Counted from the stretch's first letter, positions 28,640 to 63,826 are shown. The stretch is 64,000 nucleotides of DNA from Trichoplax adhaerens (GCF_000150275.1 NW_002060943.1:2818462-2882461); one strand, 5' to 3'. Numbers and translations are program-made. Notes: generated by a model not told the origin, from the letters alone.

Positions 28640-28753
28640 TTGGAGTTCTTCAAAGTGCGAAATAAATCGACAGCAAGCTATAGACTAAAATCGAAGATCC
28701 CTCAAAAAAATTGTGTTTGATTTACGGTACAAACTTTTCTTGCTGGCGTCTGT

Positions 28754-30066: not shown

Positions 30067-30305
30067 AGCATGAAATCCTTTCATGCTGTACCATCAGTGG
30101 ATGTGCACTGCAAGTTTCTACAATAAAAAAAGTCGCGTCAGTCCTAAGTAATAAAGTCCAACTTCTATTTAGCAATAGCGGTACTGTAGACTACAGGGTA
30201 TGCCTCAGGGCCCTTAATTTAGCATTCTGCGATCAGCGTCAGTATTAATTCACCTTGATCGGTTACCACACGGTATACTGTACACAGCAGAAACGATGGA
30301 TGATG

Positions 30306-30638
30306 TCATAGGATAAACTCAGACGCGTAGCCCTAGTACAGTACTGTACTACTATGGTTAGCTTTCCCTGCGATCCGACTCCAGTTCAACGTTCATTATA
30401 TCTTAAAACTGTAGAATAATGATGACTGGACGAGCAAATATATACAATTGATTAGTTCTTGCGATGAGTGATTGATTATATCATAGAATAAACCCAGATG
30501 CGTAGCCCTAGTACAGTACTGTACTAATGTTGTGTTTAGCTTTCCCCGCGATCCGACTCCAGTTCAACGTTCATTATAACTTAAATCTGTAGAATAATGA
30601 TGAGTAGACGAGCAAATATATACAATTGATCAGTTCTT
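30306..30638. repeat. Tandem duplication, ~175-bp unit x2
   Basis: 30306-30460 and 30481-30638 share gcgtagccctagtacagtactgtacta...gcgatccgactccagttcaacgttcattata...acgagcaaatatatacaattgat.agttctt. Confidence 0.88.
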
Positions 30639-33848: not shown

Positions 33849-36493
33849 ATGAATTCAGGTACACTTCCTTCCCAAAGTATGGATAAATCAGTAAAAAGTT
33901 CAGATGAGGACACTTCTGAAGAAGATGAAATTAGCTTCTTCACGTATCGAAATAGTCAGCCGATCAATTTTGTAGAAACTCAAACTCGTAAGGTCATTAT
34001 TGATGACGATGACGATGATGACATTATTAGTTTTGAACCGGCCAACAAAAGACAAAAGAAGGGAAATACGAGATCAAAAAGTACGGAATTAGACGATTCC
34101 GAGATAATTAGGTAATCGACTACTGTTATAAGACATACTGAATTTGCTAATGTGAACCTGTCATTAGTCGTTAATGAATTAATTACAAGTGAATAACTAT
34201 GCGTTGATGTTGCATTACGGCTTTGACGATCATACTTTCCTGCTGAAACTAAATACTGGTATTTCAAGAAAAGACGATATCTACTCTACGCCAAGACTAT
34301 CCGTATGCTAGTCATACAGTGTTGACGATATTAAATACTGAGTATAAAGAGAGATTTTAACCCAAGACACTTGGTGAGAAACTGAAATTGCATCACTGTA
34401 GATACCTAATTGCGTGTACACTGTACTGTACTGCACAGGACTCTATTTGAACATCTTCTGCATATTTTGTACTTCACCACATACCATAATTTTATTGTAT
34501 CATGCAGTTGTAAATCATTTGCTTGGGCTTTCAATATTATTAGAACGTATTTATCGAAGTAAGTATCTAAGGAGAAATGTTATTGCATAATCTAGGAGGT
34601 TTATCCATACAAGTCGATATGCATAACAATACTGTAGATACTCCAGTTACAAATACCATTGATCAACAAGTATATTTCTTCTCCTATTACTCCTCCACAC
34701 CTCCTAGTCGTTGAGCCTACTATATGAATAACTTAGCTAAAGACCTTATTGGAAAATATCACTTCAAGATTCAAATCGTAGTCGAAACACTTGCAAATAA
34801 CTTGCATCAGTTAATAATGGAACGCCATAGACTGGCTAACTTATTAACTACATGGAGTCAATGCTGCAAGTGTATCTTACGTAACTCGACTATACGCGTA
34901 GACTACTAGAAGTAGTGGTAATTTCTAGTAGTCCGTGACTTAGCACTTATATTGCTAGGTAGTCGCTACGGTATTCGATATCTAAAACTAGTAGTAATGT
35001 GCTGTACATAAAGAAAATCTCTCGAGTACTCACCTCGAGTAATAGTTATGCTTACCTTAGCGGAATCTTAAAGTCTTAAAAATTTTTTTTTCCTATTCCT
35101 CAATGATAGCAATGAGGATTATCTCATCTGCACATCGACCGTGGATACGGATGCTCTTCGTCGACAAGTCGAGAAAGAATTGGAATCAGATGAAATAATC
35201 ATGTTAGTATTTTATATCGTAAACTGTATATAAAATGTGCTGTGCAGATTTTTAGTGTTGACGTAAATTTAAAGATCACATTTTGCTCACCTCCAACTAG
35301 ATGTATTACAATCATTCTACTAGCCTGGTTGATTAATTATTACTTATAATCATAAATTCAGAATTAATTCACATCAATATAGGAGTATAGGTAAAACAAC
35401 TGATTTTATTACTCTTCATAATCATGTAGGAAAGCTAACAGTATGATGGCAGAAGTACTACGGTAGGAGAGTCTTTGTGAATAGGCTGTTACAAGGAATT
35501 TTAAGCAGCCTCTTTGCAACCTTGTACTAGGCATGATCGAATCATTTTGAAGTGGATATACCCATCTTTTCTGATATGTGCCTAATTCTGCAATGTAGAC
35601 GAAAAATTGACGAACATGAGGACACCCATTCTCAGAATCCTGACGAAGATCTTGATGAACATCCCATCAGCGGCACTCAAACAAATAAGTTTGTTCGCAT
35701 TCCTATTCGAATTGGTGATAAAATCAAGCGATACAAATTATTGGAGGTACAAAATACGAATTCATTCGAAGCAAACAGAGCAATTTTACTTTCTGTATTC
35801 GTAATTAGGTATTAATGGCCTTTTTACAGACTGAGCCATTTCAAGTTATTGCGGAAACAATAGCTCGAGAAGAAATGATTGGCGTGGATCAGGTTTTAAT
35901 CTCTAGAAAAGATCTTGATATCAAACTGGATGATACTCCACAATCGATTAATTTTTCAGTTACAGATATACTCGGTAAGTAAACTACTTATTATGTTTGC
36001 TAAGTTAACGAAAGAGTCGCCGGACTAGTATTTACGATATATTGAATAATTGCTGTATTATCAGTTAAAAGTTGACAACCCTTAAATGCAATCTATGTCG
36101 TCTGAATCTATAAATTTTTTAGATTTTTTCGTTATCAAAAAGCCAACTCGAACTGAAAAGTGCCAGACTGATTCAATTCTAACGATAAAAATTCAAAGTG
36201 ATGATAAAAGTCGCGCTACAAAGACATTCAAGGTCCATAAAGTAAGTTGCTAATTGACGGACTCTTAACTGAAGAACTGCCGTCACAGTCTTAATCGCAA
36301 TTGTATAAATATTTTACAGCTCAAGCCTTTGGAAACTGCATTTAAGGAATATGCAAAATTTCATCGGATACCTTTATCGTCGATTGCTTTCTCTATCGAT
36401 GGGGAAAGAATTGATTTGAAAAGGACGCCAGTATCCCTAGAATTAGAATCTGGTGATATAATTGATGCTCGTATAATTGCAGATACTACATAA
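33849..36493 (+). CDS. NFATC2IP: NFATC2IP/NIP45/Rad60/Esc2 (RENi) family protein with tandem SUMO-like domains
   Basis: Acidic N-terminus with SIM-like VIIDDDDDD. SLD1: FVRIPIRIGDKIKRYKLLE/TEPFQVIAETIAREE..VLISRKDLDIKLDDTPQSINFSVTDIL. SLD2: LTIKIQSDDK..TFKVHK/LKPLETAFKEYA..IAFSIDGERIDLKRTPVSLELESGDIIDARI. No C-terminal GG; stop 36491-36493. Confidence 0.85.
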
Positions 36494-40688: not shown

Positions 40689-41052
40689 GGTGGGCTATTA
40701 ATGAAAGTCAATTGAGTTAAATGAGGTTATAAAGATTGGATTGCTACCCAATTACTATTGAGCCATCATGAAGACATTAACATAACCTGCTACCACTGTA
40801 TCTGTCTATTCGTTACTGTTCCAATCTATTTTACAGTGTACCAAAACAACACCTTGCGTAACATTTCCAACTAAATGAATGGCATGATAGCCAATCGATC
40901 ACAGCTCTATCATCGATTTGCAAATAAACATTGATAGACTTACATGCTGCCTGCAAACTACTACGATCGCTTCTATGGAGTGGAGATAAAATGTTAGCCG
41001 ATAACTTCTGTCTGCCGGCGTTGGCCTGTGCTAATCCTACGCCGGTGCCGCT

Positions 41053-41780
41053 TACAGTACATGTACTGTATGCGTCACCAGTATACTGTAGTACTGTACT
41101 GTACTGTACAGTACTGTACTGTACTGTACTGTAGGTCTTGATGGTCTGGTCCTGTACAGTGTACAGTACAGTAAAATGCAAATCTAAGTACTGTAGGGAA
41201 ATACTGTAGTCTACTGTACCGTAACGGGCCGAAGCCTGGTGCAGCATGAATGCGCATGCTGATACAGCTACTGTACTGTTACTGGTAGTTTGAACACAAC
41301 CCTAGTCTTACTAAGCCCAAGGTACTGTAAGTTACAGTAGGCTTCGTTCTCATCGGAGAAATGGGTGACAAGATCTCATTTAGTTCCAGGCTAAGATTGA
41401 TTAATCGCATCGGACTGAACTTCAAGGCCTCTTTAACATATCTAAATGAGTAAGACTGCAGAGTACAAAACTCACAGGACTATGAATAAACATCCTTTCC
41501 ACTTACTGTAGTATTGAATGATGGTGACTCTATCAACCTGTATGGCTTCGCATGTCTGTCTGCAGTACGTCTGATAACCGAACTTTTCTCAGGTCGACTA
41601 GAGATGGCCAAGACTTCCATACACTACCACAGACTTTACAAGACATATATGCGTTCTACCAGATTCCGCTCGCTACATGGTACTCAATATCAACGTCCAT
41701 CTTGATCTAGTGTACAATGTACAGTACTATACTTTACAGTGAACAGTACTGTGTTGTACTGTACGGTGTGCATTGTACAG
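41053..41780. promoter_or_regulatory. GTAC[A/T] arrays in EIF2B1/GTF2H3 divergent promoter
   Basis: Two lobes (~41053-41338, ~41711-41780) with locally raised GC/CpG content between divergent ATGs at 40688 and 41826. Confidence 0.65.
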
Positions 41781-44877: not shown

Positions 44878-46387
44878 TAACGCGGTTACTGGACACCTTG
44901 TAAAGTAGCTTGTAAATAATCTAACGACAAGTAACGCTTATGATGTAACTACAGAAAGAACCCTTATCATTTACCTAATTTATACATGTCGAACTTGAAA
45001 TCTGTTATCTAGTAAAGAGTTTCTGATACTATTTGTTACATGAAGCCATGTTTTGTATGATACATTTACTATTGTAATAAATAACATAATATCTACCTTA
45101 CTCTAACGAGACAGTATCCGAATCTATAGCTATATTTCTGCTAAACAAACGTAAACAACTCTACCTTGAAACATCTTATCCGCACAGATTTTCTAGTAAC
45201 ATGGGTTACAAAACTATCATTTCTTTGACTTCCGAGAAATGATAGCGATAGTAAATCGAATAAAATTGTTCACGTTAATTTAAATTATCGAGTAAGGATC
45301 TCTGACTTCGATATTAAATCTATATATCGATACAGAATATACGCGCATATACTGGTATATCATATTCGCACGTGCTTCTTAACAATTTCTTGCCAATAAT
45401 GAGTGTCAAAGTTGGTATTATTCTACTTTCATGCACGTGAAGTATAAACAAACATCTTTTTCACTACTACTTGACATTTATAAAACTATTAGTTATGAAG
45501 AACTGATAAATTTTTAATAAATTCAGATCTGAATTTAATCTCCTTACATTTGATTATTTCATATTAAGGATTTGTGTGTACAGTAAATACCGTTGCCGAT
45601 CATTAAACACTACTAAAAGGCTAGGCATTATATGTAAGTATCATAACAATAGTCTCTCCCTCTTATAAGAATTATGGCAATCCAATAGGACATAGCATCT
45701 ACGAACATAAAAATGAGCTAAAGCCGAAATTGTAGACTCTAAACGGTCTAGATATTAAATTTTTCGGGATAGTATTAGTATCGCATGCGCTATGCATTTA
45801 AAAGAGAGTAGCGTCGAAAACGATGCCAGCCGAAAATGTTTATTGAAACTTGCTTATGAATTTAGAGAGTATGTTAAATTTTTTAAATGAAACTTCATCA
45901 AGTGAGTGCCTTTATATTAAACAAAACTGACCTGAGTCGCTATCGCAAGCTATACAATCTAAAGATTAAGCTTCGTATGAAACTATTTCACATCACTCAG
46001 TTGAAAGATAGAAAGGTTTGAAATTGATGCCGGTACAGGATATGATTTATTGAAACTTGTTTATCAAATTCAAGACAATATTACGCATGGAATGACATTT
46101 CAATTACTAAGACACATTGGTTATTCATTTTTTAATCGATAGCTTAGAATCTAAACTATCAACTGATAAAGAACTTTATCATTCTTCTATTCTACTTTCT
46201 CTATTATTTTGTTTAGATTTGCTTTTCAACTAATCATAATTTCATATCATCATATTGGAAAAGATAATTCAATAAACAATCTATTTATTAATGATGTTAT
46301 AAATAAATTTGATCTAAATCGGAAAATGTTATTTTTTCTAGATAGATTGATCAGCATATTAACATCAAATTACCATTAATAGACTGA

Positions 46388-46666
46388 CTAGCAATGGATT
46401 TGCTCATAAAAACAGACGCCAGAGTTATTTTCAGTTGGTAAGGCACAAATTGCAGGAACAGTATAGCATTCATAGCCCGTACAACAGTCCAAATGTGATT
46501 GACAAGATAATGGATTAATACAACGCTGTTCTTTATTTTCAATTAGGGATCGAAACCAATCATTTAGTAGTACTCTGTCGGTCCTCTTGCTGTTGCCAGG
46601 CATAGCCAAGACTGATGATGTCAGTGTAAGGATACAAATCATCAAAATTAGTGATTGGATTTTCAT
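46388..46666 (-). CDS. Secreted cysteine-rich (knottin-like) prepropeptide 1, 92 aa, intronless
   Basis: Hydrophobic signal (MKIQSLILMICILTLTSSVLA), propeptide ending EQR, mature 44 aa C-x5-C-x5-CC-x4-C-x6-C-x10-C-x6-C. Paralog at 55994; TATA upstream; AATAAA ~100 nt downstream of the stop (46284-46289, minus strand). Confidence 0.88.
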   Translation of the reverse strand: MKIQSLILMICILTLTSSVLAMPGNSKRTDRVLLNDWFRSLIENKEQRCINPLSCQSHLDCCTGYECYTVPAICALPTENNSGVCFYEQIHC

Positions 46667-46757
46667 CTTGCAGTTATAGGCACCAAGGTAATAGTAGATT
46701 GAGAGTTTCCAAAAGATTAAGATTCCCTAATATCAACAGTCCAACCAGATCTGATGA

Positions 46758-46765
46758 TATTTATA
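46758..46765 (-). promoter_or_regulatory. TATA box (TATAAATA) of peptide gene 1
   Basis: GGTATAAATAT on the minus strand ~92 bp upstream of the ATG; matched by a TATA box in the paralog. Confidence 0.6.
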
Positions 46766-49700
46766 CCTTCTTCGTACATGCTTTGTTGATACAGCAATGC
46801 CACAAGGCGTTGCAGCAGTTCGCATGTTGACAATTGGAATGCATTATTTTCAGAATCAAGGAATCAATTCTTTTTATGGAATTGCCATTGTACAGTAAAT
46901 ACCTATAAAATTGCGTTGAATCATTTCTATTTTCAATCTGTTATAAAATAATAGCAAAATTATATAACCAAGACAAAAAATTAGCCATGCTATTAATAAG
47001 TGCTTTAGTGGCTGGATCATCAATAATGAATATCTATCATATGTTTAATTTTAATTATTGCCTCATTTTAGTTCATCAAACGTGTTTTAGATCATCGTTG
47101 AGAGCGATTGTATGATCAGCAGATTAAAGCGAATCATAATGCTTGAAATGAATCGATCTCAGCTATAAAATAAATGGTGTAAAATAAATTTTTGGTTTAC
47201 TACGCAGTAAACTAGCTACACCAATAATTGCTATATCTCCACAGCTTTGGTGTACATTTGAATAATTGATTGACACAGATATATGCACGCACACGAATTA
47301 AAATAGTTTATGCCCAAATAAGTTCGACATAATAATGTTATAATTTATTGCACTTTAGAATGAATTATTGTAATGTGTAACAATATAAACAAGTTGCCTT
47401 TGCTACATTACAGTATTCTTAGCAACCGCATTATCTTCCATTATAATATTCGATATCCATAGGTATGTGTTATGTAAGACTGCATGTATTTGTAGATTTA
47501 TTGATTTAACGATAACAATATCTCTGTCCATCTAGCTACCTAATAAATTTACTGACGTCAATAGCACAAAGGTAGATAAAGGTGAAGAGATTAAATAAAA
47601 GCGATCGTGCATAATTAATTAATGATATTTCTTCAGAATGATGTCAAATTACTAGCGTTAATCTCTACCCGAATGATAGACGAACTAGGCTGCAATCGAT
47701 AAGGTCGATCACTTTATAGACTTAAGGCTCGATAAATTGTCTCACCCACGCCTTTCAATTCTAATCTCATTTTAAATTTATAGACATTATTAAGACAAAA
47801 CAAGTAAAATTTCATTTCGTCAATGAAATGATAACCATGTTTTGTACAAGAGAATTGTTTGCCTGCTAGAAGATAGGATGAATAATCCATCTTCTATAAC
47901 GAGAAAGTAGGAAATATAAAGTAATTTTCGCAACTATCACCCTTTACTATGATCTATCTATCTAGAAGAATTTAAATTAGTATAAATAAAGAAGCAAATT
48001 ATTTGATACATTAATTATCCATAATCCAATTGTACATTAGTGCGGTCACTGATACAATATCGTTAATGATTAGATAGATAGACAACTTTACCGAAAGTAA
48101 AACCTATACTGTTACAATCTGCTCGCATGATTAGGTATTGAAATAATTATGTATAATCCAATATAGAGGGTTGTCAAGGAAAAATATTCGCGTATAATAT
48201 CTAGCAATGATATTCTATTTCGAGAAAAATGAGAAGGAGAATTAGAAAATAGGTAAAAATTGTTAGTCTCTATAAAAAATTGTTCTTTCGTAACTGCACA
48301 GCCTCTACGACAAATGCTTATACGTAGAACGGAGAGTATGTTTCTATATATAAATTCCTAGACTGACGTCCAGGAAGCAATTTAATTTTCTGGTAAACAA
48401 TACAATATCTCATTCTTGCTTTTAGATTTAATAAAACACACTGCAAATCTAAGGTCATCAAGTCTATATCGCGACAAACTCACCAAAATATTCACAATAA
48501 CAAACTTAAAACTATAAATTGACAATTCAGACATATCTTGAAGATGGATAGGATTGTCAATAATCATTTTGGCTTTAATATAGAAAATGAAATCGAAGTC
48601 TATAACCCGAATTCGGTATAAAAGCGTATAGAAGTTTCAATAAATTAATTGAATCATCCTCTGCCAATACTTTCATTATTCTATGCTTCTATAAACAATA
48701 AATCTTTCATGAAATTATACCAGCGCAGCATGCATTATAATCATTAAAAGTAACATTTCCCCAGGTAGTCTTTCCTATGATATCACAGTCTAGTCATTTC
48801 GAGCTGTCATAGCTGATTTTAAAAGTCTAATACATTCTAGCGGATTGCATAATATTTCTAATGGCCGTCTATTTACTTCAAACCGATAAATTGGTGCTAA
48901 CAGATCGTGCTTTTTAATTAAGGCTGTGACATCATAAACAGCTTGACATAAAATCTGTTGCCGATAGTTCTAATTTACTAACTTTTGCTTATGATTACCA
49001 GCCTTTATTTCATGCTGTTACGTCATAGCAGCTTAATAGTTTTGTCTGAGTAATTATTTTAGCTTGCCTAAATAATCATGCTTATGATATAACCATTATT
49101 CTACATTATCATTCATCTTACATCTTTGATTAGATGTTCATATAAGGTATTCTTGATATTAAAAATTCAATACCAAAATGAAAAAACAATGGAATCATCA
49201 ACGAATACATAATAAGCTGATGTATTCGACAAAGTAATAGTTAATAGAATTATCAGTATACCGTATGTTGGATATAATCATCGAAGTCTAATGCATTCCT
49301 TTTGATACATCTTTACCTACTCATTGATACACTTAAATTAATTCTATGGTTAACCATTATTTATAACGCCATACTGAAGATTATTACCTATGCTGATAAA
49401 AGACTTTTTTAATATACTATTGTTGTATGCAACTGCACTTAATTAAATTCTAAGATTATCGATAATCCAAGAAACCAGTGCTAAAGAGAATTATTACCTA
49501 TCTTGATTGAAGTACATTCCCGAAAAAATAATTTTTATAATACCCATTCTCGAATAGAAAGCCTCCTACATCCATTTTTACATTCTTGTAATTGTTCTAT
49601 CTTAATTGTGGGATTAATCTTAATCTATCAATGCTAGAGAAACCGTTTATTACTCAAGAAAAGAGTGCTGAAACACGGAATATTAAAATGGCTGACGATA

Positions 49701-52700
49701 ATTTTAAGTACCCATATAGACTAAATCACTTCCCTGATATACCTTTCGTAATACCGATATCGATTGGAGAGCCTTCACCACCCATTCTCATATTCGAATT
49801 GTTAATACAGTAATTTAACTGTATGATCAATCTTAATGAAATGTAATACCCGTGGTGATTAGAAAATCATCATCATTCACATTCGAGTAAATATTAAGTT
49901 AATTGTATGATCAATCTTAGTATAAAGTAAGAGTACCGGAGATAATTATTTTAATAGCCAGATGCCTATGTTTATAAGCACATCGCTTGATACGCTTTTC
50001 ACCTTTATATACGTACGCTTACTATTATTATATGATCTGTCATGATCTAAAAATTGAGTGTTGGAGATAGTTGTTACCTGTATTGATTAAAGTTCTTTCC
50101 TAATTCATTTTTATAATGCTCATATTGATTGAAAAACCTTCTTCACACACATTTTATATTTCTAGGAGTGTTTTAAGTTAACTATTTGAGCAGTTGCAAT
50201 AACAATACGAGTACTAAATATAATTATTACTCTCGCAAACTGAAAAAACACATAAAATTAATTCGTCCAATCTAGGACTGGCTAATATTTCGATTGCAAG
50301 ACTTAATCTCGATGCGCTCAATACGGTAATATATAACACGTAAGATCGATGTAAGATCTCAAGAAAATGTATATGAGTATATCATAGATTATAAGTTATC
50401 AAAATATCAGTAAATCGTAATCTCTGCCCTTAATAACAAATATCACAATTGCAATCTATATTAATATTAACGAATATTCTTTTATCATAAGTTTGGACTT
50501 TATACTCCAGCTTGACGTTAACATGGGTTATATAAACTGTATTAAAATCAACAATTAAAAAACTAACAAAAGTATACAGTAATGACACCATATTCTAGCA
50601 TCCTAATACATAGAATAAGATTAATAAAAACTAGTATCTAATTCGAACATGGATTATCAGCAATGGTATTTATTTTCATAGCAATATTGATATTTCAAGC
50701 GCTATTTGTTAATAATATTAAATATATTGTTAAAATGGTGTAACAGGCTAGTCATAGTCGATTTTCGTTTTATCGAATAATCTTGTCGATCAATATCTAC
50801 ATTCTACCAGAACAAGAGTCAAAAATAAGAATATAATGTCATTAATTCAGCTAGTACGGTTCGTAATATTAATTACAATGTCATTCATGTACGGCACTGA
50901 ATTCTTTCTAATAAAATTTGAAAGATATTGTACCTTATATCAATTATTAATATGGACTAGAAAGAAGCGCAATAGGGGCTATGTAAGCAAGTACTAGGAA
51001 ATAACTAACATAATAATACTTATTTTAAATTCTAACATTAAGAAATACTAATTCCAGCTGTAATATTATCTAAAGTGTCAATAGAGATTAGAACAAGAAT
51101 AATATGAGCTTTAAAAGCGAGCACGAGAAACAGCTGATATACCAATATTTATTTTAACTTTTACCCTTAAAAGAATTCCAATTCCAGCTATAATGTGATC
51201 TGATGCACGTTTTAAATATATCCGTAATATGCTAATGAGAAATAGAGCGATTATGCACAGTTATGTAATATTCTATTTTACAAAAAAATTAAGTCTCATA
51301 TTTACCATTTCACTTCAACACTTCTTTGCAATTATATAATGATGTAATTCCATTCTTGAATTATTACAGTACTTATAAAACTAAGATCCACATCAACCGT
51401 TTCATTTTTAGATTCCTTTGCAATTCTATGATGATGTAATACCATCTATGAATCACTACAATACATTACATAAGCTAGATATAAAATTAAATAGTAGATC
51501 TTAATCCGGAAATGTCAATATTTAGTACAGTATTTGTCTTCATTACAATCGTAAACGAAAATTAAGCGATAGTAACTGCGTATTTTTTCTTATAATGATT
51601 ATAGTTAGTGTTTGCCATATTCATTTAAATATGATAGACATTATCCTGCCTGGATAATTAATCTAGCGAGCACATATATTACGTACTATTTGCATATGCT
51701 CGTAACACCATCAATTTTCGAACTCTTTCCAATCATTTCAATTATTACAATCAAAATAAGTTAAAAATCTTGTCCGTGAGAGAGAATTTCAATAGTTTTA
51801 AATCTATTGAGCCTCAAATCTCATCAACAAGTAATAATCTGAATTGAATGATCATAGAGGTAGATTTTTAGACAGAAAATGATAAAAGTAAATGAAAGTT
51901 CGCATTGTAAAACAGCAAGTTTGCTCAAAATCAGTCATCGATAAGTTATAGAAAAAAATAAAATAAATGATTAATTGTAAACCTAGTTATAATTCAAGCT
52001 AAAATAAGCAACAGGGATTAATTCAATAACGCAGAAATAAGTTTGCTGGGCGTAAACGAAGAGTATTTCAAATTAACGAAAAAATTTTTCGAAAACACAC
52101 CTGGCCGAATCGGATCTAATTAATTAGTGAGAGTAATCAGCTTCTAGCGATCCTTGCTGTGTCTTACTGAGTTAATGAAGTTGTACTATTTGGGAAGTTG
52201 TCCAGTGTTATAATTGAGGCATTCTACAAATCTTCTTCACATCATACAACGAGTAAATTTGACATTACTGTTGATAGAAGTTAGGTAAATCAGGATGCAT
52301 CCTATGCTACACTTAATCATAGATTATTTTTTGTACAGGTATTTATTCAAAGCTTCTTTCAGGTTTAACTATTACTCGACTAACTAGCTAACTTTCAAAT
52401 ATCCTTTTCCGTCCTCGACATGTAAAATGTTGCAAATTTAAACAGAGATTGTAAAAAAATCAAAATCAAGACCTCCCTGAGGATAAAAATGTTTAAGCCA
52501 GTTTTTCATCACGCTAAACAATATGTCGAAATATAGGACAATGTAACATCTAAAATGAAATTTACCAAGGGTGCGTAGTTACAGAAAGCAAAAAAGTATA
52601 ATTTGAAGTACAAAACTAAGTACATAGACGTACAGTATTAAAATTTATTAACATGCTGTTATTTAGATTTAATTGAACAAAACAAGTTTAGTAAAATTCA

Positions 52701-53064
52701 GTTTCGCTTAGCATACCGGATATGATATGATGTTAAAGTAGCCCTTTAATCCTAATATGTCGGTAACTATTTTTGTGAAACCGTCCGATCTCTACAGCTG
52801 CAGCCCAAATACAGAATGATCCAAGTCTACTTAGACTTTGACTTTGAAATGCTATTAGAAATGCGCCATCAAGTCCAGTAGATGAATGAAATCTTCAAAT
52901 ATTGTATCCATTTGATCATTGAAGACAGATTTTTAAGCTAGAATAAACCTATTTCTCAGAAGCAGCCGCAGTTTAATGACTGAATGTAGGGATTACTGAA
53001 GACATCAGGGTATGTAACAGTATCAAAATTAATTAAAGGTCTGCTCTAATACCCTTTTAAATCA

Positions 53065-53201
53065 GATATTATTAGAATTAAAGACCCGTTTTAGATATCA
53101 TATCAAATCCTGATATTATTAGAATTAAAGGCCCATTTTAATGTCATATCAAATCCGATAGTATTAGAATTAAAGGCCCATTTTAATACCATATCCTATC
53201 C
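53065..53201. repeat. Minisatellite, 45-47 bp x3
   Basis: gata.tattagaattaaag.ccc.tttta..t.catatc.aatcc starting at 53065, 53112 and 53157. Confidence 0.85.
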
Positions 53202-54544
53202 ATGTCTTTAATAGGTGCCGTATTAATCTACCATCAGATTACAGATAGTGTGAAAAGATTCTCTCAAACATGAGCGAGAAAATCACCTAAGCCAAATAAA
53301 AGCTGTTGTTAAATTACAATCAAATCAAATGTTATTAAAATAAAGTTAAAGTTGATTTGAAACAGTGTTACGGTAATTTTAGGTCACAATAATATCTTAC
53401 TGTATACATAAATACCGCATTAATTAAAAGCGGCAGAACCTTTTATAGTCCAACAGATTAGGGAAGAGATTTATTTTGTATGTGCGAAGGGTTTACTAGC
53501 CTTTATAATTGTCTAGTATTAAACAGGGTATGCATGCAAGCAGAATAGCATTATTATGATATCCAAAAGAGATCAAGACTGAAGGTAGCAATAAGTTATG
53601 GGTGTGAAAGAGTTCTGTTGATTCCTTGGAATAGTATCAAGAAATTTATAAATAAAGGCAGGATACAGTATCCGATACTCACAGATATGAGTCTTATATG
53701 ACCGTCAAATTGATGAAAGTAACCACATCTTATCCTTCAAAGTTTAAAAAATTGTCAGAATCATTTGATATAAAATTTTATGATATATGTAACAAGATTA
53801 AATAATGCAGCAATAACGAGTAAATAAGATAGGCAATTAGGTCAAGAGAATGTAGCTTTACGTAGAGGAATATCAACAGCATGAATAACATGACGATTTG
53901 AGGCTGTAGCTATTGCAGATGCATAACATACGTTAAAGTATATTAAATAATAAATTTACAATGTGTGGATGTTTATATCGTTACAATAATAAATTAATTA
54001 TTGCTACTAAATGTTATTTGCAGGCATTTTCATTTTATTTATGATTACGAACTGCTTTCTCAATATTAAGACTTGTATAAGCTTATTGTGATTAATTATC
54101 GTTCTATCGAGGTGTAGCATTAATTATCAGAACACTGCAGTAACATAAACTTATCAGAAGGGTCCTAATATTATTTAATCTAACTTGGAATGGTGTTTTT
54201 TAGCTTCATCACGACGGCATAAAAGAAACATGTAGCCAGTTCTTCACGCGTGCGGCTAATATTAGGATATTGCTAATTCTTTACATAAAGGAATTAATAG
54301 AATAGCAGCACAACGGTAGCGGTTTCGAGTGCAATATGATTGTTTGAATAACTTTCCTGTTTAAGTGTAGCAAGATTTATGTCTTGGACTTGGCAGCATA
54401 TTGTCATTAGTTTATAACATGTCAATACTGATACTCTTTACTATAAAATTACCATAATGAGCGCCACTGCGATCAGATTATTTAATCAGGATGTTTTCAA
54501 TTACTATATTAAAGTTGGAGTATTGTTAACTATTTTCGCACTTA

Positions 54545-55130
54545 CATACATGGTATTGCAATGAAGGCAAATGCTTATTTGGATATTCCATTGGCGATTG
54601 ATACTAATGCATTAAGCCCTAAGTGAATCTTAAATATAGCCACAGATAAAGTCTAAATATCTTCAACTATTTCCCATTAATATACATAGCATTGCAATGA
54701 AGATAACTACTTATTTGAAGATTCTATTCAGAGATCGATATAAATTTATAAGTCCTAAATAAATATTAAATATAGCTATCACGGCTAAAGCCCAAATTAA
54801 GAGTGAAATCTTTTGAATTTCGAGCTTTAGATCGCTACGCAATTGCCTTTAAGTGCAATGTTGATCATATTCAACCATTTTATTGCGCTACGGAAAAGTT
54901 TAATTACATTGCATATCTGAAAAGAACTAATCAAGTATTTTAAGGAAGATAACTACTTATTAGGATGTTCTATTTATAGATTGATATTCGTAAGCAAAGC
55001 CCTAAATGAATCTTAAATATAAGTATATATACAGCGCAAGTATCTTTAACTGCTTTTTAGTTTACAATTCGTTATTATTGCTATGAAGAGGACTACTTTT
55101 CTTATTTGGATGTTCTATTTAGAGATTGGG
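54545..55130. repeat. Degenerate repeat, 4 partial copies (~135-bp spacing) upstream of peptide gene 2
   Basis: ttgcaatgaag..act.cttatt.gga..ttctatt..agat.gata..aag.cctaa.tgaatcttaaatata at ~54545, 54682, 54944 and 55078. Confidence 0.7.
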
Positions 55131-55869
55131 ATTCATTCATAAACGAACCTTAAGCTTAGTCAATACTTCTGGAGCACTTCATAAATGATAGCAAGCTAAG
55201 ATTCAAAATATAAAGTATTCGATGTAAGGAAAAATCGCTTCAAGATTTATCATGTAGTCCTAATTTAAAAAAAACACTTAATAAAATATATCCGCTTGAT
55301 TATATTAAGTCCTATTAACAAAACGGCAACAATACTATTATCACAGATGATTTGCAAAGCTAGCGGTAGTGTTTTGTGTTTTCAACGCTTTTCATTTCTC
55401 AATACTATAAGACACCATGCTACCAATAACAATCGATATAAAGGCAATTTCATTCTGTAATAAATGATATTATTTACGATATCAAAATATGTCTAATACT
55501 GACTTTTCTGTTCATGAGATGATCAATAATTCAGTAACTGAGTCAATCCTAGTAGCTACACTGCTACCTCAATCATTCGAATTTTACAGAAATTTTCAAT
55601 CATTGCAAAATTATCCAGTAATCTGTACATTGTTGATCGTGAGAGGAATAGTTTTCGTACCTCTGCAGTTAGTGACTGTGTATCGCAAATGCTATAAATT
55701 CAATGGACTCTCTCTTGTAGTAACTAGTATCGGTAGTATTTAGATAATACACAAGTGAACTGCTATTTGATTTTAGATTATTATTTATTTACAGCTCTTG
55801 ATTAAGGAGTTATTGATCGAAAAAAATTTCCGTGTACTATTTTAGAATATCGTCATTGGTATGGAAAAG

Positions 55870-55879
55870 TATATAAAAG
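55870..55879 (+). promoter_or_regulatory. TATA box (TATATAAAAG) of peptide gene 2
   Basis: Consensus TATA ~115 bp upstream of ATG 55994. Confidence 0.62.
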
Positions 55880-55993
55880 AAGTTGAAATTAGCAAAAAAT
55901 TGTGTACCATTGCCGACTTGGATGCAATCTGCAAGAAATTTGAAATCACTTTTTTCCTCCTATTGCGTTTGAAGTACTTAGCTATTTCCAATC

Positions 55994-56257
55994 ATGAAAT
56001 CTTTTACTGCATATTTGCTGTTATTTGGCGTTCTTATTGCCATTCTAGCTCTACTTGTGAATACGCGAGAGATCAGTAGTGTGGATAAGGTTGAATTATA
56101 CCGGAGGGCCATCAGACAAAAACGGTGCTTGCCCAGAATCTGCTATGGGCATGAAGATTGCTGCAGCGGTTTTGATTGTTATGTTGTACCTGCAGCATGC
56201 ATAGCTGGCTCACCGACCAATCCAGGTATTTGTGTTCCTGAGCAGATTCAATGCTAA
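55994..56257 (+). CDS. Secreted cysteine-rich (knottin-like) prepropeptide 2, 87 aa, intronless
   Basis: Signal peptide (MKSFTAYLLLFGVLIAILALLVNT), propeptide ending in furin-type RQKR, mature 43 aa C-x4-C-x5-CC-x4-C-x6-C-x10-C-x6-C. Same Cys framework as the ORF at 46388-46666. Confidence 0.9.
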   Translation: MKSFTAYLLLFGVLIAILALLVNTREISSVDKVELYRRAIRQKRCLPRICYGHEDCCSGFDCYVVPAACIAGSPTNPGICVPEQIQC

Positions 56258-57619: not shown

Positions 57620-58332
57620 GCAGTACTGTATGCGTGCATATTTAAATTGATGTCGAATTAAAACTTTGATCTCATTAACTCTCGAACGAACCATACAAAT
57701 TAATAGTACATGAAGTAGTAGTAATCGCATATTTAAATTGATATCAAATTAAAAATTTAATCTTATTTACTCTAACTGAGTTATGCCCGAATTCTTAAAT
57801 CATACAAAATAGTCATAGATGAAATAGTACTAAGTAGCTTGTGTAAATTGATATCAAATTGAAAATTTGATCCCATTTATTCTAAATCAAGTCACGCTGA
57901 AATTCTTAAATCAAGGACTGTAAAGAGGTATAGTGGAATGGATGTCAAATTTTTCGATCTCATTTTTCTTTTACTCTCCAGCAAGTTATACCCAAATTCT
58001 TAAATCATACAAACTGGTGGATCAAGCAGTAGTAACGTGTACTTAAATTAATATCAAATTAAAACTTCGATATCATTCACTCTCGATCAAGTCATGCCCA
58101 AATTCTTAAAATCATGTAAACTAGTCGCAGATGAAGTAGTAACGGGACATTTAAATTCAATTAAACTTTGATCTACAGTGATTCATGATCGAGTAAGACC
58201 CAAATTGCTAAATCATCCAAATTATCGGCTAGATTAAGCTGGATTACACGCGCATATTTAAATGAATATCAGCTTAGAATTTTGGTCTACAGTTCCTTGT
58301 GACCAAGCAATGTCAAATTGTTAAAATCCTGC
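57620..58332. repeat. Degenerate tandem array, ~100-115 bp unit x~7
   Basis: Recurring taaattgatatcaaattaaaa.tttgatc...tactct...aagt.atgcccaaattcttaaatcatacaaa...gatgaagtagta. Confidence 0.8.
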
Positions 58333-60794: not shown

Positions 60795-61504
60795 CTAGTG
60801 CAAACTCCCGTCGCTTTGCTGACGGTTTACGATAATGTGCTCATTTAACAGATAGTATTACCATTTGTCGTAGAACTGTCAGAGGTTCAGTAACTTTATA
60901 CCGTGTACTGTGTACTGTATGCTGTACAAATGCACGGTATAGCACTACAATAATGTACAGTACTGTACTGTACGTACAGTACTGTACAGTACTTTTACTA
61001 CAGTACTCATATTGTACTGTACTGTAGAACCGAACCGACGAACGACACACAGTTCATGTCGACATAAATCGGTTCGGAACCGAACCTCTGACAGGTCTAC
61101 GGACATTTGATAATGTACCCATTTGTTATAGTAGTGATGGAGTTGCCACTTCACAAAATACTAAGAAAGTGATAAATAGACTTCTTAAATTTGAAGATGT
61201 TTGACTCTCAGCTGCCTCTGCTAAACAATTAAACCATTAAAGTATTTTCTTCGCGATTTAAAATGCATAGAATATGACAATGAGGTAGACCACGCTTTTG
61301 AAACTCGATGGTATACATGAAAGCATTCAGATTGCCAAGGATACGGTTTCTGAGATCGTGTAATAATTTTTGTTGCTTAATTCTAAACACTCTCGCCGTG
61401 ATATCCGGACGATCTGCAGCTGATTGTCCTGGTTTGAGCTCGCTAATTATTTCGTGCCACTGTGCTTTGCATGTAATTGTTATAAATAACGTAGGTTTAC
61501 CAAA
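60795..61504 (-). mobile_element. Internally deleted, non-autonomous Helitron (3' end defined; 5' end not located)
   Basis: Minus 61504-61250 translates FGKPTLFITITCKAQWHEIISELKPGQSAADRPDITARVFRIKQQKLLHDLRNRILGNLNAFMYTIEFQKRGLPHCHIL (Helitron Rep motif 1 and HUH motif 2). Minus 61236-61129 gives WFNCLAEAAESQTSSNLRSLFITFLVFCEVATPSLL (RepHel inter-domain segment). The 3' terminus is CCGTCAGCAAAGCGACGG hairpin (60825-60808), a 9-nt spacer, then CTAG|T at 60798-60794. Confidence 0.9.
60904..61026. repeat. GTAC[A/T] array inside the Helitron 3' region
   Basis: tgtacagtactgtactgtacgtacagtactgtacagtac... lies between the RepHel fragment and the 3' hairpin. Confidence 0.85.
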
Positions 61505-63324
61505 TATACGTTTATGGTCAATTTGTTAATAAAATTAACAGATAGTATTATCATTCGATATTATATATATCCCTGTAATAGTAATGTACTATGCTATATT
61601 AAGATTAGTTAATAGTCCAAAGCACATTACGATAACTATTGTACGGTGATGGACATACTGTACCAAGTTAAGATTAGCAGGTACTGTAAGATATCTACAG
61701 TGCGGTTCAATGTCCTTAGTACTGTGGTCAATTCTATACCAATCATTATAATGTGTCTAAGGATCGCTGTCGTATGCAAGCAAAGCTTGCTCTATCGATA
61801 GTAACCGTTAGAAGAAATTGTAACAATCAAAATGGCTGTGTAGAAAACTCTATAAAGATTCTATGTTTATTCAATTTTCATCAGAATATTACATGAAATC
61901 AAAATTTAAAGGCCCAGTGGCCACTCTTAGCGATATAATGAATACTATTTTAATAATCAGTACTCTGCAGAAATTACTACCTTAGAGCTATTCGTTTTAC
62001 ATGAAGAAATCTTTAGGTTAAAAGTACTGTAAGAATCTTATACTGACCTATTGAAATGAACCCATAATCAGAGTCATTTAACAGTAGTATAAATACCCCC
62101 GCGCTACTCATATTCAAGAGTGGGATCATTAAATGTTTCGATTACTAGGCTTTATAAGGACTGTAGCTGGTTTTCATTTAGTAAAGAAAATATAGAGGAG
62201 TAAAGGTAATACAGTACATGGAAGCTATCCTTTCAGATTAAAATAAAATGCCTAATAACATAATTAGAGAATAGAAGCTCAGAACAGAAATTTGAGCTTC
62301 ATCACACCTCTGAATCGAATGGATACTGTCGGACTTCATATTAATTAATGCTATCAAATGTTATATCTTGCTTGATGATTATGAATTATAATTGAATTTC
62401 ATAATTAAATTTTTGCGTTCAAATTGAACTTTATTTATTATTATATTGAAATGTAATATATTGGACCTAACACACAGACCGCTCACTGATAACTTCCTAA
62501 TCTGAGTAAAAACAATTTTTATTCAATAAAGATATACTGTAATTTCTCTACCATCGGTAACTTACTAAAGAGCTGCCGTTAAGAATAAATGATTCACCAT
62601 ATGATATGACAACTTGTCAAGAAGTAAATTGAATATATGCTTGATGTTATTGAGAATATCTTCATCGATAAACAATAATCACGTACAATGTAATATGTAT
62701 TATTAAAATATATAATTATTAGGACGTAAGGCAGTTACTCTTATGATTGTTTACAGTATTGTGATTAAATCCGATCACGAAAATTAGAACTTTACTAGAT
62801 CTAATGCAAAGACTAGCTACACACAGCTCTACTCTAGCCAAATACAACTACTCAAAGACTTCTAGAAAGAGCAATCAGATAATCTAATATCTCCTGCTTT
62901 TACACTCTCTGTAGTCTTTGCAGTAGCAATCAGTATAGCAGCATTCTACTATATTTACACATATTCAGCTTATTATTACTTACAATATTTTAAAGCGAAC
63001 CATCATTAATTCAATATGGAAATGATTACAGTATTTTCGTGGATACTATTCTTACCATTTAAAGTACAATAAACTAAGCATATCCTAATATATGATTTAA
63101 AATTCTATTTTTACCTCTAACCTTATTAGTAGCTCAATATCTTACTGTATATAATATAGTCATCTATACTCTAGCATAGAGTCTATCCTTACAGTCTATA
63201 ATTATGGGCTACTAAATATGTATCATAAGATGAATGTAGAAAAGACAATACCGTACATCATGCTAAACATGGCTAATAGTCTACAATCACAATATTAAGT
63301 TACCTTTACAGTATATAAGCTTTT

Positions 63325-63374: not shown

Positions 63375-63826
63375 GTATTAGTATGTTTACCGAATAAGGA
63401 TGGTTACTATATACAGTATAGAAATCAAAAGTAATTGGGACAGGGGAACTACAGTAGGATAACACTACGAATTGCAAGAGAGCAATAGAACTAATAGTAC
63501 CTACTGATGTGTATCAATCACTTCTACCTTCTCAATAATATTTACATAAATCCTAGAGATCATTCATTTCTATACCAATTCAAATTTCGTTAAGTAACTT
63601 TCATATTAGTAATCGGGACAGGGGAACTACAGTAGGATAACACTACGAATTGTAAGAGAGCAATAGAACTAATAGTACCTACTGATGTGTATCAATCACT
63701 TCTACCTTCTCAATAATATTTACTTAAACCCTACAGATCATTCATTTCTATACCAATTCAAAATTTCGTTAAGTAACTTTCGTATTAGTATGTTTACTGA
63801 ATAAGGATGGTTACTATATACGGTAT
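63375..63826. repeat. Tandem duplication, 178-bp unit x2, flanked by a 45-bp repeat, next to the gap
   Basis: 63431-63608 and 63609-63790 are near-identical; 63375-63419 recurs at 63782-63826. Confidence 0.9.

What the first reader, a model, noticed from the sequence alone, without database searches (positions are those of the whole stretch)
46388..56257. Divergent pair of intronless secreted 8-Cys knottin-like peptide genes: candidate undescribed toxin/defence/signalling peptide family
Seen: two head-to-head single-exon ORFs 9.3 kb apart, each with a signal peptide, a propeptide ending in a basic cleavage site (EQR; RQKR) and a 43-44 aa mature domain C-x4/5-C-x5-CC-x4-C-x6-C-x10-C-x6-C ending in Cys. 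My manual alignment gives 21/44 identities (H-x-DCC-x-G-[YF]-[ED]-CY-x-VPA-x-C, N-x-G-[VI]-C, EQI-x-C), while the signal and pro regions are essentially unalignable. Established: signal-pro-mature architecture with a C-C-CC-C-C core is the inhibitor cystine knot (ICK) layout of O-superfamily conotoxins, spider toxins and sponge asteropine/asteropsin peptides. Inference: an ICK with C1-C4, C2-C5, C3-C7 plus an extra C6-C8 bond tethering the C-terminus. I do not recognise this spacing as a named family, and such small ORFs are often missed by annotation. Conservation concentrated in the mature domain, the reverse of the conotoxin pattern, suggests a fixed target.
Basis: partly seen in the sequence, partly recalled or inferred. 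Interest (0 to 1): 0.88.

Follow-up and report, generated by a model that had tools for sequence, protein, structure and literature searches.

The report
Unannotated placozoan knottin-like peptide genes
Two small, intact, apparently unannotated Trichoplax genes encode secreted eight-cysteine peptides of a family found here only in placozoans, whose annotated sister genes are strong markers of the animal's neuron-like peptide-secreting cells, so they are most likely signalling peptides built on a toxin-like scaffold.

Summary
Window 46388-46666 (-) and 55994-56257 (+) are complete divergent ORFs of 92 and 87 aa, 9,327 bp apart. Each has a hydrophobic leader, a basic site directly before Cys1, and a 44/43-aa eight-Cys domain ending in Cys (21/44 identical; BLASTP E 4e-18).

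The window is Trichoplax adhaerens. A HMMER scan of 1.84 billion proteins found only seven true relatives, all 85-119 aa. Three carry Trichoplax names and the rest are unnamed assemblies. Neither exact sequence is in a 15-billion-protein collection that holds other T. adhaerens proteins.

Across 12 members, eight Cys, one Pro and one Gly are invariant.

Three paralogues appear in Table S5 of Najle et al. 2023 as "hypothetical" neuropeptide precursors. They are 113- to 794-fold enriched in single peptidergic cell types. No peptide was detected and the main text does not discuss them.

No Pfam, PDB-sequence or Foldseek match is significant. The weak top hits are mostly ICK toxins and knottins. 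AF2 confidence is moderate, and the knot topology could not be checked.

Verdict: real genes of an uncharacterised family, probably paracrine signalling peptides. ICK fold is plausible but unproven. Interest 0.6.

The parts
46388..46666 (-). Gene A: complete 92-aa prepropeptide ORF including the stop codon
   Evidence: ORF list. BLASTP to B gives E 4e-18. The relative P0004 is 59% identical over the full length. An in-frame stop lies 20 codons upstream of the ATG.
46604..46666 (-). A: predicted signal peptide, about aa 1-21. The cleavage point is approximate (after V-L-A).
   Evidence: The most hydrophobic 15-aa window starts at aa 6 (Kyte-Doolittle mean 2.54). The -3/-1 rule was read from the sequence. 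SignalP was not available.
46523..46603 (-). A: pro-region, aa 22-48. It holds a KR site, the D-W-F motif and the terminal KEQR site.
   Evidence: The motif is present in 12 of 12 family members at 7-10 aa before Cys1.
46391..46522 (-). A: 44-aa eight-Cys domain (C-x5-C-x5-CC-x4-C-x6-C-x10-C-x6-C) ending in Cys
   Evidence: The AF2 model has mean pLDDT 73.0, with an N-terminal bridge and a beta-hairpin around Cys6 and Cys7.
46759..46765 (-). TATA-like box 99 nt upstream of the A start codon
   Evidence: This is a sequence match only; promoter activity was not tested.
46284..46289 (-). AATAAA 99 nt downstream of the A stop codon (candidate poly(A) signal)
   Evidence: Sequence match only.
46667..55993 (.). 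9,327-bp AT-rich spacer between the two divergent genes. No ORF here has any support. It contains degenerate tandem repeats at about 53.03-53.2 kb and 54.5-55.1 kb.
   Evidence: (G+C 0.30). No Rfam or tRNA hit.
55870..55876 (+). TATA-like box 124 nt upstream of the B start codon
   Evidence: Sequence match only.
55994..56257 (+). Gene B: complete 87-aa prepropeptide ORF including the stop codon
   Evidence: ORF list. The relative P0005 is 51% identical. An in-frame stop lies 4 codons upstream of the ATG.
55994..56125 (+). B: signal peptide (about aa 1-19 to 1-23) plus pro-region, with the E-L-Y motif followed by RR and the terminal RQKR site
   Evidence: The hydrophobic window starts at aa 8 (Kyte-Doolittle mean 3.33).
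56126..56254 (+). B: 43-aa eight-Cys domain (C-x4-C-x5-CC-x4-C-x6-C-x10-C-x6-C) ending in Cys
   Evidence: The AF2 model has mean pLDDT 75.8 and the same secondary-structure layout as A.

Best explanation
A and B are two intact, apparently unannotated paralogues of a small gene family of Trichoplax adhaerens, found here only in placozoan or placozoan-like assemblies.

Proposed mechanism:
1. Each gene is a single-ORF unit, probably with its own TATA-type promoter (inferred).
2. Each encodes an 87-92-aa prepropeptide. A signal peptide takes it into the secretory pathway.
3. The C-terminal 43-44 residues fold into a compact four-disulfide, knottin-like domain.
4. A prohormone-convertase-type cut at the basic site next to Cys1 (KEQR in A, RQKR in B) frees that domain.
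5. The pro-region may also release a short linear peptide carrying the conserved [DE]-[WL]-[YFL] motif.
6. The products are stored and released by one or a few of the neuron-like peptidergic cell types and act as paracrine ligands on a receptor or channel of other cells.

Shown: the ORFs, the family and its invariant residues, the basic sites, and peptidergic-cell specificity of three paralogues (from the literature).

Inferred: secretion, cleavage, fold, expression of A and B themselves, and the signalling role.

My confidence by step: real genes and family membership about 0.95; secreted and processed about 0.8; knottin-type fold about 0.55; signalling role about 0.45.
For: Genes and family:
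- Complete ORFs, with a paralogue match at E 4e-18.
- A HMMER scan of 1.84e9 representative proteins found 7 true relatives of 85-119 aa (E 1.5e-28 to 1.7e-4). It found no longer protein carrying the domain, apart from one spurious bacterial repeat protein.
- Across 12 members, eight Cys plus one Pro and one Gly are invariant, and Asp before CC and Glu-Gln before the last Cys are nearly so. The Cys spacing is nearly fixed.

Constraint:
- A against P0004 is 70% identical in the mature domain and 48% in the signal and pro-regions. For scale, the housekeeping HGH1 exon is 67% identical to its nearest non-Trichoplax relatives.

Processing:
- A basic residue lies 0-3 aa before Cys1 in 12 of 12 members.
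- The pro-region motif is present in 12 of 12, with a basic residue directly after it in 10 of 12.
- Placozoan peptidergic cells share a module of prohormone convertase, carboxypeptidases, PAM and glutaminyl cyclase (PMC10580291).

Expression of paralogues (PMC10580291 Table S5):
- TrispH2_006371 (= P0006): maximum fold change 793.8 in peptidergic_iota_like.
- TrispH2_006370 (= P0011): 287.4 in the same cell type.
- TrispH2_009847 (= P0014): 113.2 in peptidergic_kappa.
- Hoilungia Hhon_g02044, g02045 and g02046: 128-280 in peptidergic_mu and mu_like.
- These values are in the range of accepted precursors in the same table (PWN 1318, SIFGamide 395, RWamide 129).

Fold:
- Two independent AF2 models give the same layout at pLDDT 73-76.
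- Their best Foldseek matches are mostly ICK or knottin peptides: EETI-II, Magi4, lambda-MeuKTx-1, Tst2, robustoxin and PcTx1.
- The best PDB and Pfam sequence hits, though weak, are also ICK toxins: Hi1a at E 0.019, PcTx1 at 0.1, Toxin_12 at 0.032.
Against:
- No mass-spectrometry peptide was reported for any paralogue in Table S5, and no A or B pro-region fragment was found in the stored part of the supplements. That peptidomics targeted short linear peptides, so a 4.5-kDa disulfide-knotted product could have been missed.
- Every similarity to ICK families is statistically insignificant.
- AF2 confidence falls to about 50 over the last residues, including Cys8.
- A C-C-CC-C-C framework does not guarantee an ICK fold, and AlphaFold can mis-assign disulfides (PMC11035057).
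- Table S5 marks the paralogues 'nosignature': they lack the repeated amidated-peptide architecture of classical neuropeptide precursors.
- No receptor is known.
- That the unnamed Logan/ENA relatives are placozoan is inferred, not shown.
Confidence: 0.5

Rival explanations
1. Defence or toxin peptide: a knotted peptide released to the outside to deter predators, immobilise prey or microbes, or shape the biofilm, as most ICK peptides in spiders, cone snails and sea anemones do.
For: The only database similarities, though weak, are to venom ICK toxins. The signal-pro-mature layout with a basic or Glu-containing site before Cys1 resembles toxin precursors. Multigene families in local clusters are typical of toxins: TrispH2_006370/006371 and Hhon_g02044-46 have adjacent gene numbers.
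Against: The annotated paralogues peak in peptidergic cell types, not in lipophil, gland or epithelial cells. The mature domains are the best-conserved part between paralogues and are 70% identical between A and P0004, whereas toxins usually diversify there. The domains are anionic or neutral, with net charge -5 to 0, unlike classical cationic antimicrobial peptides. The family is small: about five paralogues seen per species.
Confidence: 0.2
2. The active product is the short linear pro-region peptide carrying the [DE]-[WL]-[YFL] motif. On this reading the Cys-rich domain is a co-packaged carrier or folding partner, much as neurophysin accompanies vasopressin.
For: The motif is present in 12 of 12 members at a fixed distance from Cys1. 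A basic residue follows it in 10 of 12, and a dibasic site lies within 8 aa upstream in 6 of 12. Peptidergic cells carry the full processing machinery.
Against: The Cys domain, not the pro-region, is the most conserved part. The motif is only three residues long and its flanks vary. No such peptide appears in the stored part of Table S5.
Confidence: 0.1
3. Knottin-type protease inhibitor that regulates the extracellular digestive enzymes of the ventral epithelium.
For: The best Foldseek match of model A is the squash trypsin inhibitor EETI-II (TM 0.63 normalised to the target, rmsd 2.9 A). Trichoplax digests its food externally with secreted proteases (PMC12013895).
Against: That match has E = 4 and probability 0.21, and it drops to rank 12 for model B. 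There is no sequence similarity to inhibitor families. The paralogues are not expressed in digestive gland cells.
Confidence: 0.07
4. Chance ORFs, decaying pseudogenes, or exons of a larger gene.
For: There is no direct transcript evidence. The exact proteins are not in the protein collection. B has no AATAAA or ATTAAA within 650 nt of its stop codon.
Against: Both ORFs are intact with all invariant family residues. Relatives at 51-59% identity are also intact. ORF G+C is raised over the flanks, and in-frame stops lie upstream. Stand-alone 85-102-aa paralogues are annotated and expressed. A length-unrestricted HMMER scan found no longer protein with the domain.
Confidence: 0.03

Closest known systems
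Placozoan orthogroups OG_4604, OG_4605 and OG_4606 of Najle et al. 2023 (TrispH2_006371, TrispH2_006370 = XP_002108551.1/B3RK03_TRIAD, TrispH2_009847; Hhon_g02044-46, Hhon_g04522)
   Same: True homologues. They share the precursor layout, the eight invariant Cys, the V/x-P-x-x-C and G-x-C positions and the E-Q-x-x-C end, and they have the same size.
   Different: A and B are separate paralogues, only 28-38% identical overall to the annotated members. They are not in the protein collection. No expression data exist for them. OG_4606-type members have ten Cys and a 2-aa tail. The published labels 'PRGamide' and 'DGEamide' come from a weak homology screen and do not fit this architecture: in P0006 the P-R-G is followed directly by Cys1, not by a basic amidation site.
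Spider ICK toxins: pi-theraphotoxin PcTx1, pi-hexatoxin Hi1a/Hc1b, Pfam Toxin_12; and the eight-Cys delta-hexatoxins Magi4 and robustoxin
   Same: A C-x(4-6)-C-x(5-6)-D-C-C-x-G-x-E-C-[YW] front half; 40-44-aa mature peptides; a propeptide ending in Arg. The delta-hexatoxins also have eight Cys, and, from my own recollection rather than a tool result, a C-terminal Cys. These are the top weak hits by both sequence and fold.
   Different: Nothing is significant (E 0.019 or worse by sequence, 2.2 or worse by fold). The second half (V-P-A-x-C ... G-x-C-x-x-E-Q-I-x-C) has no counterpart. From my own recollection, delta-hexatoxins have a CCC triplet, which A and B lack. The organism is non-venomous and nerveless, and the paralogues are expressed in peptidergic cells. 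The resemblance is best treated as shared scaffold or convergence, not family membership.
Cone-snail O-superfamily, framework VI/VII conotoxins (Pfam PF02950). The eight-Cys framework C-C-CC-C-C-C-C, which I recall as 'framework XV', was not tested here.
   Same: Signal-pro-mature precursor and a C-C-CC-C-C core.
   Different: The Pfam match has E 0.35 in one of 11 members. The loop lengths differ. The conservation pattern is reversed, with the mature domain most conserved. The framework alone does not fix the fold (PMC11035057).
Toxin-like neuropeptides of Cnidaria (ShK-like peptides in Nematostella neurons, bioRxiv 10.1101/2020.05.28.121442)
   Same: The concept is the same: a disulfide-rich 'toxin' scaffold used as an endogenous secreted signal in neural or peptidergic cells of a non-bilaterian.
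   Different: The fold class is different (ShKT, six Cys), there is no sequence relationship, and function was tested there but not here.

Membership tests
Placozoan eight/ten-Cys peptide family (OG_4604-4606; TrispH2_006370, 006371, 009847) | Significant sequence similarity over the whole precursor | tested here: met
   The A+B profile finds P0006 at E 2.1e-13, P0011 at 1.7e-4, P0008 at 8e-11 and P0010 at 3.2e-7. The 11-sequence profile finds P0014 at 4e-21.
Placozoan eight/ten-Cys peptide family (OG_4604-4606; TrispH2_006370, 006371, 009847) | Eight aligned Cys with spacing C-x3-5-C-x5-CC-x4-C-x6-C-x8-11-C-x6-C, invariant Pro and Gly, and a C-terminal E-Q-x-x-C | tested here: met
   Alignments A2 and A3 and the spacing table.
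Placozoan eight/ten-Cys peptide family (OG_4604-4606; TrispH2_006370, 006371, 009847) | Expression restricted to peptidergic cell types | not testable with these tools
   Known for three H2 and four Hoilungia paralogues (PMC10580291 Table S5). No data are reachable for A and B.
Inhibitor cystine knot / knottin structural class | At least six Cys in a C-C-CC-C-C framework within a peptide of about 30-50 aa | tested here: met
   Read directly from the sequence.
Inhibitor cystine knot / knottin structural class | CysI-IV, II-V, III-VI connectivity with the third bond threading the ring | not testable with these tools
Structure prediction returns no coordinates. AlphaFold can mis-assign such bonds (PMC11035057).
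Inhibitor cystine knot / knottin structural class | Small antiparallel beta-sheet (hairpin plus N-terminal strand) and structural similarity to solved knottins | tested here: inconclusive
   AF2 predicts an N-terminal bridge plus a hairpin in both models at pLDDT 73.0 and 75.8. In Foldseek the top hits are mostly ICK or knottin peptides, but with E 2.2-10, probability at most 0.51 and TM 0.47-0.63.
Named ICK sequence families in Pfam (Toxin_12 PF07740, Conotoxin PF02950, calcine PF08099, Magi-5 PF08093) | Score at or above the family's gathering threshold | tested here: not met
   A has no hit at all. Across 11 members the best E-values are 0.032, 0.35, 0.39 and 2.1, each in only 1-2 members.
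Neuropeptide / prohormone precursors (functional class) | Signal peptide plus mono- or dibasic processing sites flanking the product | tested here: met
   Hydrophobic leaders, and basic sites 0-3 aa before Cys1 in 12 of 12 members. Orthogroups OG_4604 and OG_4606 are flagged 'wSP' (SignalP 5) in Table S5. SignalP and ProP were not run here.
Neuropeptide / prohormone precursors (functional class) | Mature peptide detected, and a cognate receptor known | not testable with these tools
   No mass-spectrometry peptide is listed for any paralogue. No receptor information exists.
Cationic antimicrobial peptides | Net positive charge of the mature peptide | tested here: not met
   Net charge of the mature domain is -4 for A, -3 for B, and -5 to 0 across the family.

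The most novel reading that the evidence does not exclude
Placozoa, animals without neurons, use a lineage-specific family of knotted, four- or five-disulfide peptides as paracrine transmitters. Different paralogues would mark different neuron-like peptidergic cell types, and each precursor would yield two products: a linear [DE]-W-[YF] peptide and the knottin. That would make the 'toxin' ICK scaffold an endogenous signalling fold in one of the earliest-branching animal lineages. It would also add at least two unannotated ligands, A and B, to the placozoan signalling repertoire.
Probability: 0.35. Interest if true: 0.75.

Novelty: new variant of a known kind. Interest (0 to 1): 0.6.

Why it matters
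Placozoan behaviour is thought to be run by secreted peptides from about fourteen neuron-like cell types. The catalogues of those peptides were built for short, linear, often amidated products and rest on incomplete gene models.

This family shows that compact disulfide-rich peptides are among the strongest markers of some of those cell types, and that at least two members are missing from the protein sets searched here. If they are signals, they widen the chemical repertoire of pre-nervous signalling. They would also give a non-venomous, early-branching reference point for how ICK-like scaffolds relate to toxins.

If they turn out to be defence peptides instead, they would, as far as the held literature shows, be the first knottin-like effectors described for the phylum. 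Either way they are concrete targets for re-annotation, expression mapping and structure determination.

Tried and rejected
I therefore obtained no DNA, synteny or sample origin for any relative, and could not compute dN/dS.
- The search for homologous proteins with A alone returned nothing, although relatives exist. The later 11-sequence profile search returned only 5 members and missed three that were in its own query. A blank from that tool is therefore weak evidence here.
- The length-unrestricted HMMER scan answers the operators' point about longer or shorter kin. No fusion or multi-domain protein was found. The one long hit, P0007, is a Leuconostoc KxYKxGKxW repeat protein whose score sums over 12 short stretches. 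I rejected it as spurious.
- The Pfam 'Toddler' hit on B (E 0.029; 15.2 bits against a cut-off of 27) covers the leader and basic region. I rejected it as chance. The CXCL11 hits on A (E 0.4-0.7) match a short K-x-Q-R-C-x-N-P stretch and are also chance.
- JGI metagenome scans found no relative. Alignment A2 was too diverse to run, and A5 and A6 gave no confirmed hit.
- blastn of the two loci, each with 2 kb upstream and 1 kb downstream, found no shared flanking DNA or promoter block. The duplication is old.
- No further copy or fragment is in the window. No tRNA or Rfam family is present.
- Literature searches found no paper describing the family: by accession, by C-terminal and pro-region motif words, and by Trichoplax combined with knottin, cystine knot, conotoxin, venom or disulfide-rich.
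- I did not use the viral fold library (BFVD).
- Knot and disulfide topology could not be checked because model coordinates are not exposed.

Full report
1. WHAT IS IN THE SEQUENCE

The two ORFs are exactly as reported. A is at 46388-46666 (-) and encodes 92 aa. B is at 55994-56257 (+) and encodes 87 aa. They point away from each other, with 9,327 bp between the start codons.

BLASTP of A against B gives E 4e-18.

Both domains end on Cys. The spacing is C-x5/4-C-x5-CC-x4-C-x6-C-x10-C-x6-C. The residues directly before Cys1 are KEQR in A and RQKR in B.

tblastn of the peptides against the whole window finds only the reciprocal copy. A six-frame scan for small ORFs with a hydrophobic leader and at least six Cys finds only these two.

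Both ORFs are richer in G+C (0.38 and 0.44) than the spacer (0.30). Each has an in-frame stop upstream and a TATA-like box 99 or 124 nt before the ATG. A has AATAAA 99 nt after its stop. B has none for 653 nt.

The two loci share no flanking DNA similarity, so the duplication is old. The spacer holds only unsupported short ORFs and degenerate tandem repeats.

2. ORGANISM AND NEIGHBOURHOOD

A 215-aa exon at 32753-33397 (-) is 100% identical to TRIADDRAFT_19950, the HGH1 homologue of Trichoplax adhaerens, on a 13.26-Mb scaffold (Pfam DUF383). The window is therefore placozoan, not human.

Other features in the window:
- a Rad60-SLD (SUMO-like) exon at 36269-36490 (+)
- a Helitron_like_N fragment at 61232-61525 (-)
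- an assembly gap near 63.35 kb
- no tRNA or Rfam hit

3. RELATIVES

The search for homologous proteins with A alone was blank.

A full HMMER scan of 1.84 billion cluster representatives with the A+B profile has no length restriction, so it also covers longer or shorter kin and fusions. It gave eight hits. Seven are small proteins of 85-119 aa with the same layout. The eighth is a Leuconostoc surface-repeat protein that scores by summing 12 short stretches and is spurious.

By exact look-up:
- P0006 is TrispH2_006371 of Trichoplax sp. H2.
- P0011 is XP_002108551.1/B3RK03_TRIAD, which is TrispH2_006370. It lies on a scaffold of the same length (13.26 Mb) as the one holding HGH1.
- A profile search added P0014, which is TrispH2_009847.
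- The closest relatives of A (P0004 and P0012, 59% identical) and of B (P0005, 51%), and also P0008, P0013, P0009 and P0010, come from unnamed Logan/ENA assemblies.

The divergence of these unnamed relatives is comparable to that of the HGH1 exon from its nearest non-Trichoplax relatives (67%).

The exact A and B sequences are not in the 15-billion-protein collection, which does hold other T. adhaerens proteins. As such, they are unannotated.

Two JGI metagenome scans found no relative.

4. FAMILY ANATOMY

In 12 sequences, eight Cys, one Pro (in V/x-P-x-x-C) and one Gly (in G-x-C) are invariant. Asp before CC and Glu-Gln before the last Cys are nearly invariant.

Four members (P0008, P0013, P0014, P0010) have ten Cys: a CCC triplet, one extra Cys in a lengthened first loop, and a 2-aa tail. 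Every member has a basic residue 0-3 positions before Cys1.

A basic residue follows it in 10 of 12 members, and a dibasic site lies within 8 residues upstream in 6 of 12. The pro-region is therefore not featureless and could yield a second, linear peptide.

The mature domains are anionic or neutral, with net charge -5 to 0.

The annotated 119-aa model of P0011 seems to carry a spurious N-terminal extension. Its hydrophobic leader starts at residue 39.

5. WHAT IS ALREADY KNOWN

No paper in the held library carries the accessions, the motifs, or a description of a knottin or ICK family in placozoa.

The paralogues do appear in Table S5 of Najle et al. 2023 (PMC10580291):

| Gene | Label | Orthogroup | Max fold change | Cell type |
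|---|---|---|---|---|
| TrispH2_006371 | hypothetical_PRGamide | OG_4604 | 793.8 | peptidergic_iota_like |
| TrispH2_006370 | hypothetical_DGEamide | OG_4605 | 287.4 | peptidergic_iota_like |
| TrispH2_009847 | none | OG_4606 | 113.2 | peptidergic_kappa |
| Hhon_g02044, g02045, g02046 (consecutive gene numbers) | hypothetical_PRGamide / DGEamide | OG_4604, OG_4605 | 128-280 | peptidergic_mu, mu_like |

These values match accepted precursors in the same table: PWN 1318, SIFGamide 395 and RWamide 129.

All the paralogues are flagged 'nosignature', none has a detected peptide, and the main text does not discuss them. The 'PRGamide' and 'DGEamide' names come from a sensitive homology screen and do not fit the architecture.

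According to that paper, peptidergic cells share prohormone convertase, carboxypeptidases, PAM and glutaminyl cyclase. No fragments of the A or B pro-regions occur in the stored supplements.

6. FOLD

Pfam gives no significant hit. A has none at all. Across the family the best are Toxin_12 at 0.032, Conotoxin at 0.35 and calcine at 0.39.

Sequence search of the PDB with the family profile gives Hi1a at E 0.019 (best single stretch 0.9), then PcTx1 at 0.1 and Hc1b at 0.13. These align only the front half, C...C...DCC-x-G-x-EC-[YW].

AF2 with the 12-sequence alignment gives mean pLDDT 73.0 for A and 75.8 for B. Both models show a short N-terminal bridge and a hairpin whose strands carry Cys6 and Cys7. 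Confidence is about 50 over the last residues, including Cys8.

Foldseek against the PDB finds nothing significant. The lists are nevertheless led by knottins and ICK toxins:
- Model A: EETI-II, with TM 0.63 normalised to the target.
- Model B: Magi4 (probability 0.51, TM 0.53), lambda-MeuKTx-1, Tst2, robustoxin and PcTx1.
- A few CS-alpha/beta toxins are mixed in.

Coordinates are not exposed, so I could not examine threading or bond partners. The literature warns that this framework can adopt a non-ICK fold and that AlphaFold may mis-pair cysteines (PMC11035057).

The ICK assignment is plausible but unproven.

7. MOST LIKELY MECHANISM

The genes encode prepropeptides. These enter the secretory pathway, fold into a four-disulfide domain, are cut at the basic site next to Cys1, and are released by peptidergic cells as paracrine ligands. 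The pro-region may contribute a second, linear product.

Shown: the ORFs, the family, the invariant residues, the basic sites, and the paralogues' cell-type specificity.

Inferred: secretion, cleavage, fold, expression of A and B, and the signalling role.

The rivals are as follows.
- Defence or toxin peptide. The paralogues' cell types, the conserved mature domain and the anionic charge argue against it.
- The linear motif peptide as the real product.
- A knottin protease inhibitor, supported only by an E = 4 fold hit.
- Non-genes, contradicted by conservation.

8. COMPARISON AND NOVELTY

A and B are members of the placozoan OG_4604-4606 family; sequence and motif tests are met. They work like toxin-like neuropeptides, such as the ShK-like peptides of Nematostella neurons (bioRxiv 10.1101/2020.05.28.121442), and they resemble ICK toxins in framework. 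They fail every sequence-level membership test for named ICK families.

I rate this a new variant of a known kind: a family detected here only in placozoan or placozoan-like assemblies, structurally uncharacterised, knottin-like and linked to peptidergic cells, with two members missing from annotation. Interest is 0.6. It is real and relevant to the origin of peptidergic signalling, but function, fold and the expression of these two genes are still inferred.

The HGH1 and neighbouring ORFs were searched singly and by reference.
- The Helitron fragment was only named.
They were used nowhere, and nothing was deleted.
- Proposed follow-ups are limited to descriptive evidence. Activity assays are outside what this report may propose.

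Noticed in passing
window 61232-61525 (-): A 98-aa open stretch matches the Pfam Helitron_like_N domain (E 4e-31, profile positions 107-190 of 191). This is a fragment of a Helitron-type transposon Rep protein about 5 kb downstream of gene B. No long ORF surrounds it.
   Followed up: partly
window 28713-29312 (+), 40831-41247 (-), 60844-61160 (-): Several spurious long ORFs rich in 'TVQYS' arise from imperfect (TACAG/TACTG)n-type microsatellite tracts (TRF period 15 and 22 at 28957-29177). The same simple repeat recurs at three or more places in the window.
   Followed up: partly
window 30295-30638 and 63430-63790: Two unrelated 178-bp tandem duplications, each about 2 copies at 89-96% identity (TRF). 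A run of N (assembly gap) lies near 63.35 kb, just before the second one.
   Followed up: no
P0011 (XP_002108551.1 / TrispH2_006370), outside the window: The public 119-aa model of this paralogue begins about 35 residues upstream of the Met that starts the hydrophobic leader in every other family member. This probably explains its 'nSP' (no signal peptide) flag in Table S5 of PMC10580291. The gene model likely has a wrong start.
   Followed up: partly
PMC10580291 Table S5, genes TrispH2_009845 / Hhon_g04524 next to TrispH2_009847 / Hhon_g04522: The ten-Cys paralogue lies two gene numbers away from another peptidergic-cell marker labelled 'hypothetical_dickkopf_related_3-like' (fold change 342-674 in peptidergic_zeta) in both Trichoplax sp. 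H2 and Hoilungia. This hints at conserved clusters of secreted peptide genes (the label suggests another Cys-rich one; no sequence was seen here).
   Followed up: no
window 54534-55134 and 57636-58298: Degenerate arrays of 35-73-nt direct repeats lie about 0.9-1.5 kb upstream and about 1.4-2 kb downstream of gene B. Their significance is unknown; they could be regulatory or remnants of a repeat element.
   Followed up: no
The search for homologous proteins behaviour: The word-indexed search missed relatives that share several exact 5-residue words with the query, and even members of its own query alignment. Blanks from that tool were unreliable for this short family.
   Followed up: yes
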